DNA of 64,000 bases, from the NCBI GenBank assembly GCA_965655095.1, contig OZ296656.1:44640001-44704000 (forward strand), read 5' to 3'. Below the pieces are notes generated by a model. That model was not told the origin of the DNA and made no database searches. It worked only from the letters and a program-made list of their open reading frames with translations. Below, piece after piece: positions 6,324 to 17,937 of the stretch (the first letter of the stretch is position 1; each line of letters starts with the position of its first letter). Origin of the DNA: Haplodiscus bocki. Lineage: Eukaryota. Made by a program: the position numbers and the translations under genes.

Positions 6324-6351
6324 TAAAACTACTCAATTAACGAAATGAACG

Positions 6352-6721
6352 TGTTGCGTATACAATAAACACGCCTTCGTTCCAGTCAAACTGAGTGAGG
6401 ATGGCTTAGCGGTAGCGTGTGCGCCTTTGAATCGATAGGATACCAGTTCAATTTCCGGTGAAAGAACTAGTTTCTTTTTTTTCTATTTTCCATAAATTCA
6501 CTAATTTATTGACCACTAGAAGTTTTTGCTATCGCACTTCTAATTACTGTCTGTTGATGTTTGTAAACAACCACATATTGATGATGTAAAATTGTTCTTT
6601 TCAAGCCAATACATCAAATTGTCCGATGATATCAGAACGTTAACGGCCGACGATAATTGTTAGTCAGTATTAATACATTATTCAGAAATTTTTATTATTT
6701 TTTGGAGAGTCATCGAAAACA
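6352..6721 (+). repeat. BEL 5' LTR
   Basis: tgttgcgta...gaaaaca; direct repeat of 14479-14831. About 13% divergent outside the tRNA-like block, with a 15-bp segment absent from the 3' copy. Confidence 0.95.
6399..6482 (+). ncRNA. tRNA(Gln)-like Pol III cassette in the 5' LTR (SINE-head-like, not a functional tRNA)
   Basis: A box TGGCTTAGCGG, CT-TTG-AA anticodon-like loop, B-box-like AGTTCAATTTCC with a T-arm stem, then a T-run at 6471-6482. No acceptor stem. Confidence 0.7.
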
Positions 6722-7420
6722 TTGTGGCCATAGAGAGGTGTCCTTTAAAGCCCGAGTATTTTGATGAACCTAGTAATTAGGTTTGAAATTTGAAACGAAT
6801 TGAACAGTCAGTGCTCGTTTCCTTTCGTCGAAAGCAGCTTGGAGCGTCTCCGGTCACACTATACCGCTAGGGATAGTTTAGCTGCTGAAGGCAAAATCAC
6901 CGACCGAGGAAACGGGAGCTCTCGAGAATTGTAAGAAAAAGCCGAAAAGAAGTGCGAGTGACGGTGAATATTTGGAAAAAGTGAAGAAAGACTTTGAGAG
7001 TAGTATGTGACCCACTGCTGAAGATTCTATGAAACGAGAATGAACCCAGCGAAGTAAAACATTGGCGATTATCTTTCACCTGAGATGATCAAAAACTTAT
7101 GACTCGTTCACGCTGATCGAATACATGTGGGAACTTTTCAATTGATGTCATTGCTCACCAGCAGAGAAGCCGGCAGATAAAGCCAACTTGTTGAGAGAGA
7201 AACTTAGATTCAGACTGAAAGCGATCGCTATAGATACTGCTCTCGAGAAGTTGTGAGCTAGGTCATCACCTTTCAACTGCAAACATCAAAAGAAAGCTTC
7301 CGTCGTATTTCGAGCTAAAGTTGAATGCTGAGCGTGGTAAATATCAGCTGTTAACAACCCGGCGTCAAAATTGCCCAAATCCGGGTCCCATGTGATTCAC
7401 CCGAAAATGTGCGAACTCAA

Positions 7421-8178
7421 TGTCTTATCTGCAACCGCCATTTTGTTAACAAAAAACGGTGAAACTCTCAGGAACGGTTTTTATATCTTTATATTCGTTT
7501 GAAGTAATACCGATAGCGAGCACCACCCCTCGAAATTTTTTGTCAAAATTTTCTTGATTGTGGAAACGTTGAATGGTGTTCCTTATTGGTGCAAGCAGTT
7601 TACATCGCGCTACTGAAACGCTAAGTCCCGAAGACAAGACATTGGAAAAGCGCAACATTTTCACAGTACCGGGACTTAGTTTGATTTATTACTCGAAAAA
7701 CCCCCAGAAGTAGTTCAAAAATCTTCTTGTATAACAGTTGATTGGTAAAACTCAGCTGGCGATTTGACACGATACGCTAAATAATTCCATTTCTGTGCGC
7801 GCAAGCAATGGTAATCGCCCATTTAGTATTTTTGAGCTACTCGAAGAAATGATTCCTTGTAACAACCAACTCCGTGTTCTGGTGTACTGTCCACGCGATT
7901 GTAACCCAGATAACTTCAACATTTTTAAGCAGCAAAAACTTTTAACGTTGAATAGAGTGAGAGACCTGATTTTTTAGACGAAACAGAAAAATTTTGATTT
8001 TTTTCGGCAGTACAAAGCCGTGCACCAGAGTCCCGAGTTGGAATTGAAAACACTCTCAGTAATTGTACATTATCAGAGCTATTTGAACGTCAAAATCAGC
8101 ACAAGGCGGCCAAAACAAATTTCGAAACGCGCTCAAAAAGCAGCACAAAACACTTCTTTGACCGTGATGTCTGCTTAA
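7421..8178 (+). pseudogene. Extra ORF upstream of BEL gag: decayed C2H2 zinc finger plus SGNH-hydrolase-like domain (may extend 5' to ~6780)
   Basis: CLICNRHFVNKKR*NSQERFLY at 7421 has C2H2 spacing with single-base changes at L/H/H. Frame 1 from 7573 reads MVFLIGASSL...TVPGLSL...AI*HDTLNNSI...KAVHQSPELELKTL to a stop at 8178, with a few in-frame stops. Confidence 0.6.
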
Positions 8179-10720: not shown

Positions 10721-13700
10721 TAAAAGGTTTACTGCAAATCGCGGAGGCAGACGATTATTCCACAGACTGTTTTGAGCAGATTCTTGTCTTGTGTGACTCA
10801 GCTTGCAGTCACTTTTGGATTTCTGAAAAGTTTGTCAAAAGACTCAAACTACAGGGCCCTCCGACGACACTCACTGTTCGAGGTATTACTTCTCAGCAAA
10901 CAATAAACACCCAGAATGATGACTTCAAGTTAACACCCGTTCATTCGGGTAGCTCTTGCGCAACATTCAATATCATGCATTATGTGAGGAGAGACCTCAA
11001 CCTTGGCACCGATATCATCGACGTCAAAAATTTCAAACAACGATATCCACACCTCGAGCTAGTTACACTCGGTAAGTACAGCTACGCCAATTTAAAAAAG
11101 TTACTTTTCCAAGACGCGTTCTACCTCATCCACCCGCTGGAGTTTTTGCAATCCAACCGTCGGGATACTCCGTTTGCCATACTCCTAACGCTGGCTGGGT
11201 GTTGACTGGACTGCTTCCTTCGGCTTCAGTTCTTTTGTCCTTATGTTTTGAAACACTTGTACGAACAGACAATGACTCTGAGTTGGCCAATCAACTCCGT
11301 AATCGGTATGACTTGGAGTCGTACGGAGCGTACAAGCAAGTCGATCGAAGCTCCGCAGCTGACGCGCGAGCGCTCCGCATTCTCGAAGACTTAGCTAACG
11401 ATTTTGGGTCCCGATATCAACTCCGTTTGGTATGGGTCGATGACTGAAGTAAATTGCCAAATATTTATTATTCCGCTTTTGTACAGCTGAAGTCAATAGA
11501 GCACCGTCTTAGGAAAGATCTTAATTCAAGAGTGTTGTTCCTATACAATTCAGGAAGATTTTTTGCAAAATTGTATCGTAAAAACTGATCGATCTCATTG
11601 TTTTAATGTAGAAAATCCACAGGACTGGTACTTGCTGCACCAACTCGTACTTCATTCACATATGCTTGCCAAGGTGCGACGTGTTGTAAATGGAGCCACA
11701 AAATTCCGTGGCCATTCGCTGAAAGCCACCCTTTTCAAGGTGCCAGATTTAATTCAGAGTCTGATTCATGTTCTTCTTCGTTTCCGGCAGCACCAATACG
11801 CGGTCTGCGCAGACATCGAGGAAAAGTTTCTACATGTCGGTGTCGTTCTGACAGCTGAACGGTCTTTTTGTTCCCTGTGGCGGCAAAACCCATCAAAAAA
11901 CGTTCCAGTGTTTCAATACACCCGTCATAATTTACACCCGTCAAAACAAAGATGTGAAGGTATATGCTGGCGATAATGAAATTTCGCACGTCGTGGGTCT
12001 ATATTGAAGTCACCAGTCAGACACTTTGGTAGTAAGTCGAGGAACAAGCCCAAAACAGAAAAACTTGCCAACGCAAGGGACAGTACTTAGTTTACTGTCC
12101 ACCGTGTTTGATCTCGTCGTTCTCGTAGCACCTGATACAGTCAAAGCGCGCTTACTCCTAAAAGTTATCTGGCGTCTCAGTGGCCAAAGGTGGGACAATG
12201 AAACACCGGAAGACAGTGCGCATCAGTTTTTTGAGTGGAGCAGAGAACTGCCTTCATTGAGTTCCGAAATCATCCCACGGAGCTATTTCAAACATGAAGT
12301 TCATTGTTTAGAATTGCACGTGTTTGGTGACGGCTCTCAAACTGTTTTAAGTGCAGTAGTTTTTCTCCGACGAAAAGTTGTTTTTAACCAAAACGTCATA
12401 TTAGAATTGGCTTTTGTAATCTTTAAAGTTCGTGTTGCCCCTATGAAAGCGTTGACAAATCCGAAGCTGGGGTTGAAAGCCGCCGTGCTGGCTTTGCGAA
12501 ATAGAGCTGAAGTTCACCGCGCTATGCCGATGCAATTTGACGGAGCCTTCATGTGGACCGAAAACACAGGCGTAATTCAGTGGCTACTCTCAATTGACAA
12601 ACAACCTGTGTTGGTTGCGAACCGCGTAGCAGAATTGTTTGACTTAGCAATCACAGATGTATGGAATTATGTTCAATCCGCTGACAACCCGGCCGATGCA
12701 GGTACGTGTGGTGTTGCAGCTAGTGCTCCTCTGGAATGTAGTTGGTTGAAATGTCCTGACTTTCTTAGAACATCAGATTCGCTTTTCAAGCCACCCGACG
12801 AAATTGTCAAAAGATCAGAAAAACCAAGCTAGCTACAGAAACTAAACCAAATTCCGTAACACAAAACGCGTCAACGTTCAGCACAACTGTCACCAGTAAA
12901 TGCATCAACTTTCGGCAAGCGAAAATGCAGCTCATTGAAAAATTTTTCGCATTGTGGGGTACGTTTTGCGTGTGTTACCGAAGTTCAGTGGGCATCGAAC
13001 AAGAGATGGATCAATCATCGATCCAAATGAACTTATGCTTACAGAAAGGGAACTTTTCTGTCTAATACAACTTGAATCGTTCAACTCACAGAGGAAATGC
13101 TTGTTAAAACTTTCCACAGTCAGCAAGTCTTCGAAATTAAATAAGTTTTCGCTTTTAATGGACCCAACGGTCTATTTCGCGCAACCCGCTGAGTTAGAGC
13201 GCTGGAAAAAAATATTTTTTTTGGCATGAAACACACCGTTTTGTTAGACAAAAATCACCCGGCTGTTCAATCGTGTCTCGAAAATCTTCATCACAAACTT
13301 TGCCATCAAGGTGTTGAATCTCTCAGAGCCTCAATTCAGCAAAAGTATCTGATTATCTGACTGAGACCAACTTTGAGATCAATAGAGACTAAATGCGTTA
13401 CATGCCGCAAGCGCAAAGCGCAAGTCATCAAGTCAATCTTGGCAAATCCTCCTCGGAAACGTTTGGATTTCCGTTATTGTCCGTTCACCAACACCGGAGT
13501 TGAATATCTCGGGCCATTTTACGTGTCTGTAAAATGGTCGAACGAGAAACGATGGGGATTGCTTTTCATCTGTCTAACCACACGCTCAGTGCATTCCGTT
13601 GTGGTTTTATCAATGGACACGAGTAGTTGTGTCAAGGGGATTAAAAAAATTGTTTCATGCCGTGGTGTTCAATCAATCCTTTGCTCTAGTCAGGGGAATA

Positions 13701-14466: not shown

Positions 14467-14478
14467 GGGCCCGGAAGA
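14467..14478 (+). promoter_or_regulatory. Polypurine tract (plus-strand primer site) of the BEL element
   Basis: gggcccggaaga immediately before the TG of the 3' LTR. Confidence 0.7.
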
Positions 14479-14831
14479 TGTTGCGTATGCAGTAAAAACG
14501 CTTTCGTCCCGGATGGCTTAGCGGTAGCGTGTGCGCCTTTGAATCGATAGGATACCAGTTCAATTTCCGGTGAAAAACTAGTTTCCTTTTTTTTCTATTT
14601 TCCATGAATTCACTAATTTATTGACCACCAGAAGTTTTTGTTATCGCCCCTCTAATTACTGTTTGTCGATGTTAGTAAACAACCATATATTGATGATGTA
14701 ATATTGTTCTTTTCGAGCCGGTACATGAGTTTGTCCGATGATATCAGTACGGTGACGGCGGACAATAATTGTTCGTCAGTATCATTGCATTGTTCAGAAT
14801 TTTAGTCTTTTTCGGAGAGTCACCGAAAACA
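14479..14831 (+). repeat. BEL 3' LTR
   Basis: tgttgcgta...gaaaaca; direct repeat of 6352-6721. Confidence 0.95.
14511..14594 (+). ncRNA. tRNA(Gln)-like Pol III cassette in the 3' LTR
   Basis: 65 nt identical to 6399-6463, followed by a T-run. Confidence 0.7.
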
Positions 14832-15051
14832 AAACGCTTCAACCACTTTTTGATTAAAACACTACTGCAATGAAAAACTATCTGTCTTGTGTTGCAACAC
14901 TGAAGATAACTCAGGGCTTGATATAAACTATATAGCGGACGTCAAAAAACATCGTCATGCTACTAACACTATCATCTTTGTTGATTTATAATTTCAAAAC
15001 CGGTATCAAACTGTTTTTTTGAATGCTACAACGGCACGTTGTGCAATAGTT

Positions 15052-17706: not shown

Positions 17707-17937
17707 NNNNNNNNNNNNNNNNNNNNNNNNNNNNNNNNNNNNNNNNNNNNNNNNNNNNNNNNNNNNNNNNNNNNNNNNNNNNNNNNNNNNNNNNNNNNNN
17801 NNNNNNNNNNNNNNNNNNNNNNNNNNNNNNNNNNNNNNNNNNNNNNNNNNNNNNNNNNNNNNNNNNNNNNNNNNNNNNNNNNNNNNNNNNNNNNNNNNNN
17901 NNNNNNNNNNNNNNNNNNNNNNNNNNNNNNNNNNNNN
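17707..17937. other. Assembly gap (231 N), preceded by a (gtt)n-like tract
   Basis: Run of N in the sequence. Confidence 1.

What the first reader, a model, noticed from the sequence alone, without database searches (positions are those of the whole stretch)
6399..6482. tRNA-derived Pol III cassette built into both LTRs of a BEL retrotransposon
The LTR contains A box TGGCTTAGCGG, a CT-TTG-AA loop, a B-box-like T arm and a T-run terminator, aligning by eye with eukaryotic tRNA-Gln(UUG) but lacking an acceptor stem. Its presence at the same position in both LTRs shows it was part of the replicating element, not a later SINE insertion. The known analogue is the 5S-derived cassette in plant Cassandra LTRs; I do not recall a tRNA-type case in BEL/Pao LTRs. 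Inference: a Pol III promoter for a ~85-nt RNA, a TFIIIC insulator shielding the element from silencing, or a source of SINEs.
Basis: partly seen in the sequence, partly recalled or inferred. Interest (0 to 1): 0.8.

Follow-up and report, generated by a model that had tools for sequence, protein, structure and literature searches.

The report
tRNA-derived module inside BEL/Pao LTRs
Both long terminal repeats of an old, broken BEL/Pao retrotransposon carry a decayed tRNA-derived block that was inherited with the repeat; young relatives in another species keep it with better Pol III promoter boxes, which extends the recently described tRNA-bearing miniature elements (Helenus) to full-length elements.

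Summary
The A box is at 6402-6412, the CTTTGAA loop at 6425-6431, a weakened B box at 6445-6456 and a T8 run at 6475-6482. All four recur in the right LTR.

The block is an inherited part of a ~370-bp TG..CA LTR (6352-6721 and 14479-14831) of a degraded BEL/Pao element. Every family LTR copy I could read carries it, and I saw no stand-alone SINE.

It is tRNA-derived but not a tRNA. ARAGORN and Rfam find nothing in this family and no RNA structure is conserved, yet it aligns collinearly with the genome's own tRNAs. The parent isotype is unresolved; Gln(UUG) is not established.

Three young related BEL/Pao elements from another assembly share the same PBS, PPT and LTR ends and carry a tRNA-like block at the corresponding place. 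Two of them give full-length but sub-threshold Rfam tRNA matches. The positions that are the same in all four lineages are mainly the universal tRNA/box positions. Two close relatives lack the block, so it is dispensable.

Pol III or TFIIIC activity is untested, and the window copies are probably relics.

First-stage notes report similar BEL/Pao LTR cassettes elsewhere in this genome.

The parts
6347..6351 (.). Left target-site duplication candidate, GAACG
   Evidence: GAACG lies before the left LTR and AAACG after the right LTR, a 4/5 match.
6352..6721 (+). Left (5') LTR, 370 bp, TGTTGCG...GAAAACA
   Evidence: Pair alignment. Homology of 22 other genomic copies starts at 6352 and ends at about 6721.
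6384..6398 (+). 15-nt stretch present in the left LTR and absent from the right; a remnant of a small hairpin seen upstream of the block in most family copies
   Evidence: The helix has no covariation support.
6395..6466 (+). tRNA-homologous block of the left LTR (tRNA positions 1 to about 73 by alignment)
   Evidence: Collinear local alignments to the genome's own tRNAs, z 3-5 against shuffles. Alignment with relatives and real tRNAs.
6402..6412 (+). A box TGGCTTAGCGG
   Evidence: It fits TRGYNNARNGG.
6425..6431 (+). Anticodon-loop-like CTTTGAA; the flanking stem does not pair
   Evidence: Sequence. RNAalifold predicts no pairs in this region. The stem pairing itself is my own pair count on the sequence. 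At the corresponding place the related element L085 reads CTTCCGA.
6445..6456 (+). Degraded B box AGTTCAATTTCC
   Evidence: no match to GTTCRANNC. Eight of 23 family copies have GGTTCAATTC.
6475..6482 (+). T8 run, a possible Pol III terminator
   Evidence: In one search a run of T>=5 was recorded within 45 nt of the B-box anchor in 14 of 23 copies; in most other copies no anchor was found, and at least one of those (the window's right LTR) does have a T8 run.
6722..6738 (+). Primer-binding site TTGTGGCCATAGAGAGG, one mismatch to the clade's TGGTGGCCATAGAGAGG
12008..12829 (+). Open segment of pol with the Pao retrotransposon peptidase domain
   Evidence: Pfam PF05380, E 4.9e-24, profile 2-161/162. 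There are 123 homologues, nearly all carrying PF05380.
14467..14478 (+). Polypurine-tract-like GGGCCCGGAAGA just before the right LTR
   Evidence: The same motif, GGGCCCGGAGGA, stands before the 3' LTRs of family copies and of relatives L085, L091 and L092; L089 has a variant.
14479..14831 (+). Right (3') LTR, 353 bp
   Evidence: 85% identical to the left LTR with gaps.
14507..14577 (+). tRNA-homologous block of the right LTR, with A box 14514-14524, B-like stretch 14557-14568 and T8 run 14587-14594
14832..14836 (.). Right target-site duplication candidate, AAACG

Best explanation
The block is a fossil of a tRNA-derived sequence. An ancestor of a clade of BEL/Pao retrotransposons took it into the 5' (presumed U3) part of its LTR, in sense orientation, and every descendant LTR of this family has copied it since.

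It does not encode a tRNA. What the lineages keep are the parts that make a type-2 Pol III promoter: T8, G10 and GG18-19 of the A box, GGTTC..TCC of the B box, and their 43-44-nt spacing. The anticodon stem and the acceptor pairing are lost.

My reading is that in active elements the block is an accessory TFIIIC/Pol III site. If transcribed, it would start about 7 nt before the A box and stop at the first T-run. That gives an RNA of about 90-110 nt, never the 8-kb genome. This points to a role in cis (a bound TFIIIC site next to the LTR's own promoter) or as a short RNA, not as the promoter of the element's genomic RNA.

The block is dispensable, because close and equally young relatives lack it. 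The two copies in the window belong to an old, dead element (LTRs about 85-88% alike, pol in pieces) and have a weakened B box, so they are most likely inactive relics.

Shown: tRNA ancestry, inheritance with the LTR, and presence in related young elements. Inferred: binding of TFIIIC or Pol III, and any effect of it.
For: Part of the LTR:
- The block sits at the same offset in both LTRs.
- All 23 BLAST matches of the 84-mer in the genome lie inside full-length LTR copies whose homology starts at 6352 and ends near 6721.
- All 11 LTR-like matches found with anchors outside the block also carry it.
- Neighbouring internal sequence is homologous among copies.
- The window element has a Pao peptidase domain, a PBS and a PPT.

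tRNA ancestry:
- The strict A+B pattern gives 711 matches against 0 in the reversed control.
- Alignments to the genome's own Glu-CTC, Lys-TTT and Gly-TCC genes are collinear, with z 3.4-5.1 against shuffles.
- Relatives with the same PBS/PPT/LTR ends carry a block at the corresponding place that gives full-length Rfam tRNA alignments: 20.5 bits, E 0.075 (L085) and 13.4 bits (L091).
- The columns identical in all four LTR lineages include T8, G10, GG18-19, GGTTC and TCC.

Constraint:
- Between L085 and this family the block is 61% identical against 46-50% for the rest of the LTR (p 0.008-0.035).
- Shared (lineage-level) variants are fewer in the block (0.71 against 1.02 per column, p 0.07), while singleton variants are equal.
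- Young elements (LTR pairs 96.5-99.4% alike) have GGTTCGATTCC or GGTTCGAGTCC.

Short product: a T8 run stands 8 nt after the block in the window, and T4-5 runs stand 25-40 nt after it in the relatives.
Against: - No transcript or occupancy data exist; no run on record as RNA holds the stretch.
- Nothing in this family reaches any tRNA score. ARAGORN finds 0 even at relaxed thresholds, with no excess over shuffles. Rfam gives no tRNA match at E<=10.
- RNAalifold predicts 0 pairs, and the helices I imposed show no covariation.
- Only 4 of 23 copies keep both boxes, about what neutral decay gives.
- The constraint signals are weak (p 0.01-0.07). Within the family they are biased, because the copies were found by searching with the block itself.
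- Two close relatives with young LTRs (L084 99.6%, L092 95.6%) lack the block entirely, each sister to a block-bearing element with 100% support. So it is not needed for transposition.
- T-runs are common in this AT-rich LTR. The motif after the block in the relatives (AAAATATATTTT) could equally be a Pol II TATA box.
Confidence: 0.5

Rival explanations
1. Neutral passenger. A tRNA or a tRNA-headed SINE RNA was copied into the LTR once, for example by template switching during reverse transcription, and has simply been carried along. The surviving boxes reflect slow decay and the strong starting similarity of all tRNAs, not selection.
For: - The block is dispensable in young relatives.
- Old copies decay at the same singleton rate as the rest of the LTR.
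- No structure is conserved.
- Most copies have lost a box.
- The constraint tests are only marginal.
Against: - The block persists in four LTR lineages whose remaining LTR sequence is only about 50% identical.
- The identical positions fall mainly on the A- and B-box/universal tRNA positions, while the anticodon arm has diverged freely.
- Three lineages with LTR pairs 96.5-99.4% alike still have near-canonical boxes.
Confidence: 0.3
2. A Pol II regulatory piece. The block is kept because it serves the LTR's own Pol II promoter, as a binding platform or a nucleosome-excluding stretch just upstream of a TATA-like motif. Pol III does not transcribe it.
For: In L085, L089 and L091 a TATA-like AAAAT(T)ATATTTT follows the block by 25-40 nt. 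It is followed in turn by the clade-wide core TTTGCTATCTCGAAA. This places the block where a proximal promoter element would sit.
Against: The positions kept are those of Pol III boxes, not an obvious Pol II factor site. U3/R/U5 borders and the Pol II start are not mapped. Relatives without the block are equally young.
Confidence: 0.12
3. Repeated independent capture. Different tRNAs were taken up at the same LTR site in different lineages, so the blocks share only general tRNA features and not descent.
For: The D arms differ strongly between lineages: L091 is Lys/Phe-like, while L085 and L089 share a different one. Block-bearing and block-less elements are interleaved on the pol tree.
Against: The sequence downstream of the block is shared between L085, L091 and L089 (ACCG..AAA.ATT.. 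and AAAATATATTTT), and the block lies at a similar offset, 45-65 nt from the LTR start. One gain and two losses is more parsimonious than three or four gains.
Confidence: 0.06
4. Chance resemblance. An AT-rich LTR happens to contain box-like words.
For: No tRNA program reports it in this family.
Against: The reversed-pattern control gives 0 matches in 1.5 Gb. Alignments to real tRNAs are collinear over the full length, z up to 5. Relatives give full-length Rfam tRNA alignments at the corresponding place.
Confidence: 0.02

Closest known systems
Helenus (TRIMp3), non-autonomous LTR retrotransposons with a tRNA-derived sequence in their LTRs (Kojima 2024, PMC10886601)
   Same: Both have a tRNA-like stretch inside both LTRs with kept A-box (TRGCY..YGG) and B-box (GGTTC) positions. 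In both, the stretch is mostly not a functional tRNA by prediction. Both have a PBS and a PPT and short target duplications, and both occur in animals.
   Different: Helenus elements are 311-1263 bp, carry no genes, and are thought to be transcribed whole by Pol III. Animal Helenus is linked to Gypsy partners. That paper argues that autonomous partners must use Pol II and should not share such LTRs. Here the carriers are 8-9-kb BEL/Pao elements with gag, pol and integrase domains, and a T-run right after the block rules out Pol III transcription of the genome.
Cassandra, plant TRIMs with a 5S rRNA-derived Pol III unit in the LTRs (as summarised in PMC10886601)
   Same: A small-RNA-gene-derived Pol III promoter is built into both LTRs and propagated with the element.
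   Different: The Cassandra unit is of 5S type (internal control region), not tRNA type. Cassandra occurs in plants and is miniature and non-coding. Its Pol III transcript runs from the 5' LTR to the 3' LTR terminator. No 5S match was found here.
tRNA-derived SINE heads (SINE2)
   Same: Both are decayed tRNA sequences in which the A and B boxes outlast the cloverleaf.
   Different: A SINE head starts the element and is followed by a body and a LINE-related or A-rich tail with its own target duplications. Here the block lies 43-47 nt inside a 370-bp LTR, and all 23 genomic BLAST matches are inside LTR copies.
Canonical BEL/Pao LTR retrotransposons
   Same: TG..CA LTRs, a tRNA-complementary PBS, a PPT and the Pao peptidase domain. 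Relatives also have DUF1759 gag, Integrase_H2C2/rve and DUF5641.
   Different: I found no description of a tRNA-like block in BEL/Pao LTRs in the searchable literature. Close relatives L084 and L092 show the ordinary state without it.

Membership tests
Functional tRNA gene | Cloverleaf recognised by tRNA finders (ARAGORN call, or Rfam RF00005 at or above 29 bits) | tested here: not met
   ARAGORN finds 0 in the window and in all loci. Relaxed ARAGORN shows no excess over shuffles. Rfam gives no tRNA match at E<=10 in the window, in 20 family loci or in L003. Relatives reach only 20.5 and 13.4 bits.
Functional tRNA gene | Paired acceptor and anticodon stems | tested here: not met
   RNAalifold predicts 0 pairs on 23 copies. 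In L003 the acceptor halves pair at 3 of 7 positions and the anticodon stem at about 2 of 5; both figures are my own pair counts on the sequences shown.
Type-2 (tRNA-type) Pol III promoter unit | A box TRGYNNARNGG | tested here: met
   TGGCTTAGCGG at 6402-6412 and 14514-14524. Present in 8 of 23 family copies.
Type-2 (tRNA-type) Pol III promoter unit | B box GGTTCRANNCC | tested here: not met
   The window copies read AGTTCAATTTCC. The feature is met in 8 of 23 family copies (GGTTCAATTC), in L091 and in the L089 3' LTR. L085 has G at position 58.
Type-2 (tRNA-type) Pol III promoter unit | A-to-B spacing as in tRNA genes | tested here: met
   41-44 nt start to start in the four copies that keep both boxes, and 43 nt in the window. 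Real tRNAs of this genome give 42-44 nt; that figure is my own count on the sequences printed.
Type-2 (tRNA-type) Pol III promoter unit | Run of at least four T downstream and none between the boxes | tested here: met
   T8 at 6475-6482 and 14587-14594. No T4 lies between the boxes in the window. In one search a run of T>=5 was recorded within 45 nt of the B-box anchor in 14 of 23 copies; most of the others had no anchor to measure from.
Type-2 (tRNA-type) Pol III promoter unit | Transcription by Pol III / binding of TFIIIC | not testable with these tools
   No run on record as RNA for this organism.
Helenus / TRIMp3 | tRNA-derived sequence with box A and box B inside both LTRs | tested here: met
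Helenus / TRIMp3 | Miniature, non-coding element (screened at under 1000 bp; the longest described is 1263 bp) | tested here: not met
   The LTRs are 8.1 kb apart and enclose a Pao peptidase domain. Other pairs of the family lie 4.5 and 7 kb apart. Relatives encode gag, pol and integrase.
Helenus / TRIMp3 | PBS after the 5' LTR, PPT before the 3' LTR, 4-6-bp target duplication | tested here: met
   PBS at 6722-6738, PPT at 14467-14478, target duplication GAACG/AAACG with 4/5 matching.
BEL/Pao LTR retrotransposon | Pao-type pol (PF05380) between TG..CA LTRs | tested here: met
   PF05380 at E 4.9e-24. LTR ends.
BEL/Pao LTR retrotransposon | gag (DUF1759) and integrase (rve/H2C2, DUF5641) in this copy | tested here: inconclusive
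   No Pfam match in the other open segments of the window copy, which is broken by many stops. These domains are present in relatives L084, L085, L089, L091 and L092.
Stand-alone tRNA-derived SINE | tRNA head at the element's 5' end, own tail and own target duplications, dispersed copies outside LTRs | tested here: not met
   23 of 23 BLAST matches lie inside full LTR copies. The context of 18 further 19-mer matches could not be read.
Cassandra | 5S rRNA-derived sequence in the LTR | tested here: not met
   No 5S match in the Rfam scans.

The most novel reading that the evidence does not exclude
A clade of full-length, protein-coding BEL/Pao retrotransposons has maintained a working tRNA-type Pol III/TFIIIC unit in the U3 of its LTRs across species. 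The unit acts as an optional accessory: a bound TFIIIC site that shields or opens the LTR, or a short tRNA-like RNA. Such autonomous carriers, rather than SINE insertions into miniature elements, may be the source from which Helenus-type TRIMs arise by internal deletion.
Probability: 0.3. Interest if true: 0.7.

Novelty: new variant of a known kind. Interest (0 to 1): 0.5.

Why it matters
LTR elements with small-RNA-gene promoters in their LTRs have so far been described only as miniature, non-coding parasites (Cassandra, Helenus, Ajax). The stated expectation is that their autonomous partners cannot share such LTRs.

Here the tRNA-derived block sits in the LTRs of full-length BEL/Pao elements. 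It persists in several lineages in at least two species, with the promoter positions best kept, and it is lost without harm in others. This gives a natural presence/absence series for testing what a TFIIIC/Pol III site does for a Pol II-transcribed retroelement: insulation, chromatin opening, or a short RNA. It also suggests a simple route to Helenus-like elements.

There is a practical point too. Such blocks inflate counts of tRNA-like sequences in genome annotation.

The particular copy in this window is an old relic and is unlikely to be active.

Tried and rejected
- **tRNA finders.** ARAGORN at default and at 95-70% thresholds gave no excess over shuffles. Rfam gave no tRNA match at gathering thresholds on the window, nor at E<=10 on a 261-nt slice, on 20 family loci or on L003 alone. 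So the block is not a tRNA gene.
- **RNA structure.** RNAalifold on 23 copies found no pairs. Three helices I proposed showed no covariation beyond shuffles: an outer acceptor-like helix, the upstream hairpin and a shifted T stem. I dropped them.
- **Isotype.** The Gln(UUG) parent was considered. It matches the anticodon loop and T arm only, while other isotypes score as well. I left the isotype unresolved.
- **Expression.** Two run searches found only four runs from one study, none on record as RNA. Read laying was not used, since contigs of unknown kind cannot show a transcript.
- **Stand-alone SINEs.** None appeared among the BLAST matches. An apparent tRNA array at C1:166.2 Mb turned out to be LTR-block-like sequence in a 989-bp tandem repeat.
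- **Relatives without usable LTRs.** L086, L087, L088 and L090 showed no LTR pair around the gene, so they say nothing about the block.
- **Domains.** Pfam found no further domains in the window's other open segments.
- **Primer read-through.** I rejected read-through of the tRNA primer as the origin, by reasoning: that would place antisense tRNA sequence after U5, not sense sequence in U3.
- **Consensus.** The consensus lines that DNA alignment prints were not used.

Full report
**What is at the coordinates**

The A box TGGCTTAGCGG is at 6402-6412 and the loop-like CTTTGAA at 6425-6431. A B-box-like AGTTCAATTTCC lies at 6445-6456 and a T8 run at 6475-6482. The 36-mer from 6399 occurs exactly twice in the window, at 6399 and 14511, with none expected by chance.

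The two sites lie in a direct repeat. Its true limits are 6352-6721 and 14479-14831, running from TGTTGCG to GAAAACA. The left copy is followed by TTGTGGCCATAGAGAGG, a primer-binding site. The right copy is preceded by GGGCCCGGAAGA, a polypurine-like tract. The flanks GAACG and AAACG are a 4/5 target duplication.

Between the repeats, the open segment 12008-12829 matches the Pao retrotransposon peptidase domain over the whole profile, E 4.9e-24. The other open segments give no domain, and the reading frames are broken by many stops. The two LTRs are about 85% (gapped) to 88% (ungapped) identical. This is an old, dead BEL/Pao element.

**The block belongs to the LTR**

In the 1.5-Gb genome the 84-mer has 23 BLAST matches. 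Every one lies inside a full-length LTR copy, with homology to the window starting at 6352 and ending near 6721.

- Nine copies are preceded by the same polypurine motif and seven are followed by the same primer-binding site.
- The neighbouring internal sequence is homologous to the window's internal region at 68-81%.
- A search anchored on two LTR words outside the block found 11 LTR-like places, three of them new, and all 11 contain the block.
- A 19-mer from the block has 41 matches with up to two mismatches, against 1 in the control.

I saw no stand-alone SINE with this head. One limit applies: after no more genome DNA could be cut out, so the context of 18 of those 41 matches is unread.

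**It is tRNA-derived but not a tRNA**

The tRNA finders are negative.
- ARAGORN reports nothing, and at relaxed thresholds it finds no more than in shuffles.
- Rfam's tRNA model gives no match at E<=10 on a 261-nt slice of the window, on 20 family loci, or on the best-preserved copy alone.
- RNAalifold predicts no pair on 23 copies, and helices I imposed show no covariation.

The sequence evidence for ancestry is nevertheless strong.
- A strict pattern (A box with GGTAG, a gap of 24-34, then the B box) has 711 matches in the genome and none when read backwards. A family LTR copy is among the matches.
- Copies of the block align collinearly, from about tRNA position 2 to 72, with this genome's own tRNA genes. 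Median local scores are 3.4-5.1 standard deviations above shuffles for Glu-CTC, Lys-TTT and Gly-TCC. That is about as high as different real isotypes score against each other.
- The genome's Gln-TTG gene matches well only from the anticodon loop through the T arm.

**State of the boxes in the family**

Other family copies, such as L003, L009 and L022, read GGTTCAATTCC where the window has AGTTCAATTTCC. The window's B box is therefore a degraded version. Only 8 of 23 copies keep an A box, 8 keep a B box and 4 keep both. In one search a run of at least five T was recorded within 45 nt of the B-box anchor in 14 of 23 copies. Most of the remaining copies had no anchor to measure from, and at least one of them (the window's right LTR) does carry a T8 run.

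Singleton variants, which are mostly decay after insertion, are equally frequent in the block and in the rest of the LTR (0.90 and 0.88 per column). Variants shared by two or more copies, which arose in active lineages, are fewer in the block (0.71 against 1.02, p 0.07). This is a hint of constraint at most. It is also biased, because the copies were found by searching with the block.

**Relatives outside this genome**

The Pao segment has 123 homologues. The best named ones come from the acoel Symsagittifera roscoffensis at 49-51% identity. The best overall, at 55-60%, come from two unnamed ENA assemblies. I fetched nine loci.

Five of them hold elements with clear LTR pairs that share this family's hallmarks:
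- an LTR starting TGTTG/TGTAG;
- a primer-binding site that is the same or near-identical (TGGTGGCCAT.GAGAGG in L084 and L092, with one to several changes in L085, L089 and L091);
- the core TTTGCTATCTCGAAA, or a close variant;
- where the 3' LTR was read (L085, L089, L091, L092), the tract CTTGGGCCCGGAGGA before it, with a variant in L089.

Three of the five carry a tRNA-like block 45-65 nt into an LTR of about 350 bp:
- L085, LTR pair 98.6% identical. The block gives a full-length Rfam tRNA alignment of 20.5 bits, E 0.075. The T stem is intact, the acceptor pairs at 6 of 7 positions (my own pair count on the alignment), and TCC stands at the anticodon place.
- L091, LTR pair 99.4% identical. 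The block gives a full-length alignment of 13.4 bits and has a canonical GGTTCGATTCC.
- L089, LTR pair 96.5% identical. It has GGTTCGAGTCC in its 3' LTR but no tRNA match.

The LTR of L085 has no BLAST match in the window's genome, so it comes from another species.

When the four lineages are aligned with real tRNAs, the columns identical in all four include T8, G10, GG18-19, GGTTC and TCC, while the anticodon arm differs freely. Between L085 and this family the block is 61% identical against 46-50% for the rest of the LTR (p 0.008-0.035).

**The block is dispensable**

L084 (LTRs 250 bp, 99.6% alike) and L092 (227 bp, 95.6% alike) are of the same clade but have no block. On a pol tree, L092 is sister to the block-bearing L091 and L084 is sister to the block-bearing L089, each with 100% support. 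One gain and two losses is the most economical reading. Repeated capture is not excluded.

**How it most likely works**

What survives across lineages is what TFIIIC and Pol III read, not what a tRNA needs. That is the pattern reported for SINE heads and for Helenus LTRs. A Pol III transcript would start about 7 nt before the A box, near 6395, and stop at the T8 run at 6475-6482, giving about 88 nt. In the relatives the first T4-5 run is 25-40 nt after the block.

So the block cannot drive the 8-kb genomic RNA. This is the key difference from Cassandra and from the proposed Helenus mechanism. I therefore read it as an optional accessory of the LTR: a TFIIIC/Pol III site acting in cis beside the LTR's own promoter, or the source of a short RNA. 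This step is inferred. No expression or binding data exist.

A neutral passenger remains a serious rival. In the relatives, the T-rich motif after the block could be a Pol II TATA box rather than a terminator. The window's two copies, with a weakened B box in a dead element, are most likely inactive.

**Comparison with what is known**

Kojima (2024, PMC10886601) described Helenus, miniature LTR elements of fungi, animals and a plant with tRNA-derived sequence in the LTRs, and grouped them with Cassandra and Ajax as TRIMp3.
- He noted that 'not a few' Repbase LTRs resemble part of a tRNA, but kept only elements under 1 kb.
- He argued that autonomous partners must use Pol II and are unlikely to share such LTR sequence.

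The present family meets the LTR criterion of Helenus but fails the size and non-coding criterion. It is a full-length BEL/Pao family with the same kind of LTR block. I found no paper describing this for BEL/Pao or for other autonomous LTR elements in the searchable library. The library omits most subscription journals, so the case may be described elsewhere.

First-stage notes of this scan report similar cassettes in other BEL/Pao LTRs of the same genome. I did not check those notes.

**Verdict**

This is a new variant of a known kind. It is of moderate interest, mainly because of the related young elements and the natural presence/absence series, not because of this decayed copy.

Noticed in passing
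window 6399-6470 vs 14511-14582: The tRNA-like block is almost identical between the two LTRs (66 same, 3 different) while the rest of the LTR differs (244 same, 40 different; Fisher p 0.02). The identical stretch is bounded by two indels. The other readable LTR pair of the family (L006/L009) shows no such effect, so a short gene-conversion tract or chance fits better than selection.
   Followed up: partly
G000 C1:166,199,193-166,205,157 (not in the window): Seven tandem copies, 989 bp apart, of a sequence homologous to the LTR block (TAGCGTTAGCGTATGCGCC...ACCGGTTC). The period is about one LTR plus 620 bp, so it could be a tandem array of a short LTR derivative.
   Followed up: partly
L054, L057, L058, L060, L061 (G000 C1, C2, C5): A second dispersed tRNA-like sequence with a CTTTGAA loop and a canonical GGTTCGAATCC B box sits in tandem repeats of about 890-900 bp with about 120-bp sub-repeats. 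It has no similarity to the window beyond the tRNA-like part.
   Followed up: partly
G000 C6:84.97-85.01 Mb (L064-L077); C7:23.68-23.79 Mb; C4:107.9-108.1 Mb; C1:144.0-144.2 Mb: There are large tandem arrays of tRNA genes: Glu-TTC/CTC with interspersed Gln-TTG copies that look like Glu genes with a changed anticodon, plus Arg-TCG, Lys-TTT and Gly-TCC/Val-TAC arrays. The first look of the Rfam tRNA search counted about 138,000 candidates in the genome.
   Followed up: no
L003:1500-1537 (family copy): In this copy the 3' half of the T loop and the acceptor-like tail form a perfect 7-bp hairpin (AATTCCC/GGGAATT) directly before the T-run. Its reverse strand gave a chance match to a CRISPR repeat model (20.6 bits, E 0.31).
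   Followed up: no
window 6722-7350: The roughly 630 bp after the primer-binding site have no counterpart in the other family copies. Those copies carry a different stretch of about 530-670 bp before homology resumes near 7353-7439.
   Followed up: no
window 17707-17937: A run of N (assembly gap or masked). I left it untouched.
   Followed up: no
L085:1291-5844; L089:11885-15095; L091:2240-6371: In the related young elements, LTR plus adjacent internal sequence is tandemly duplicated (units of 2.3, 1.6 and 2.1 kb, 98-99.8% alike), giving three LTRs in a row in L085 and L089.
   Followed up: no
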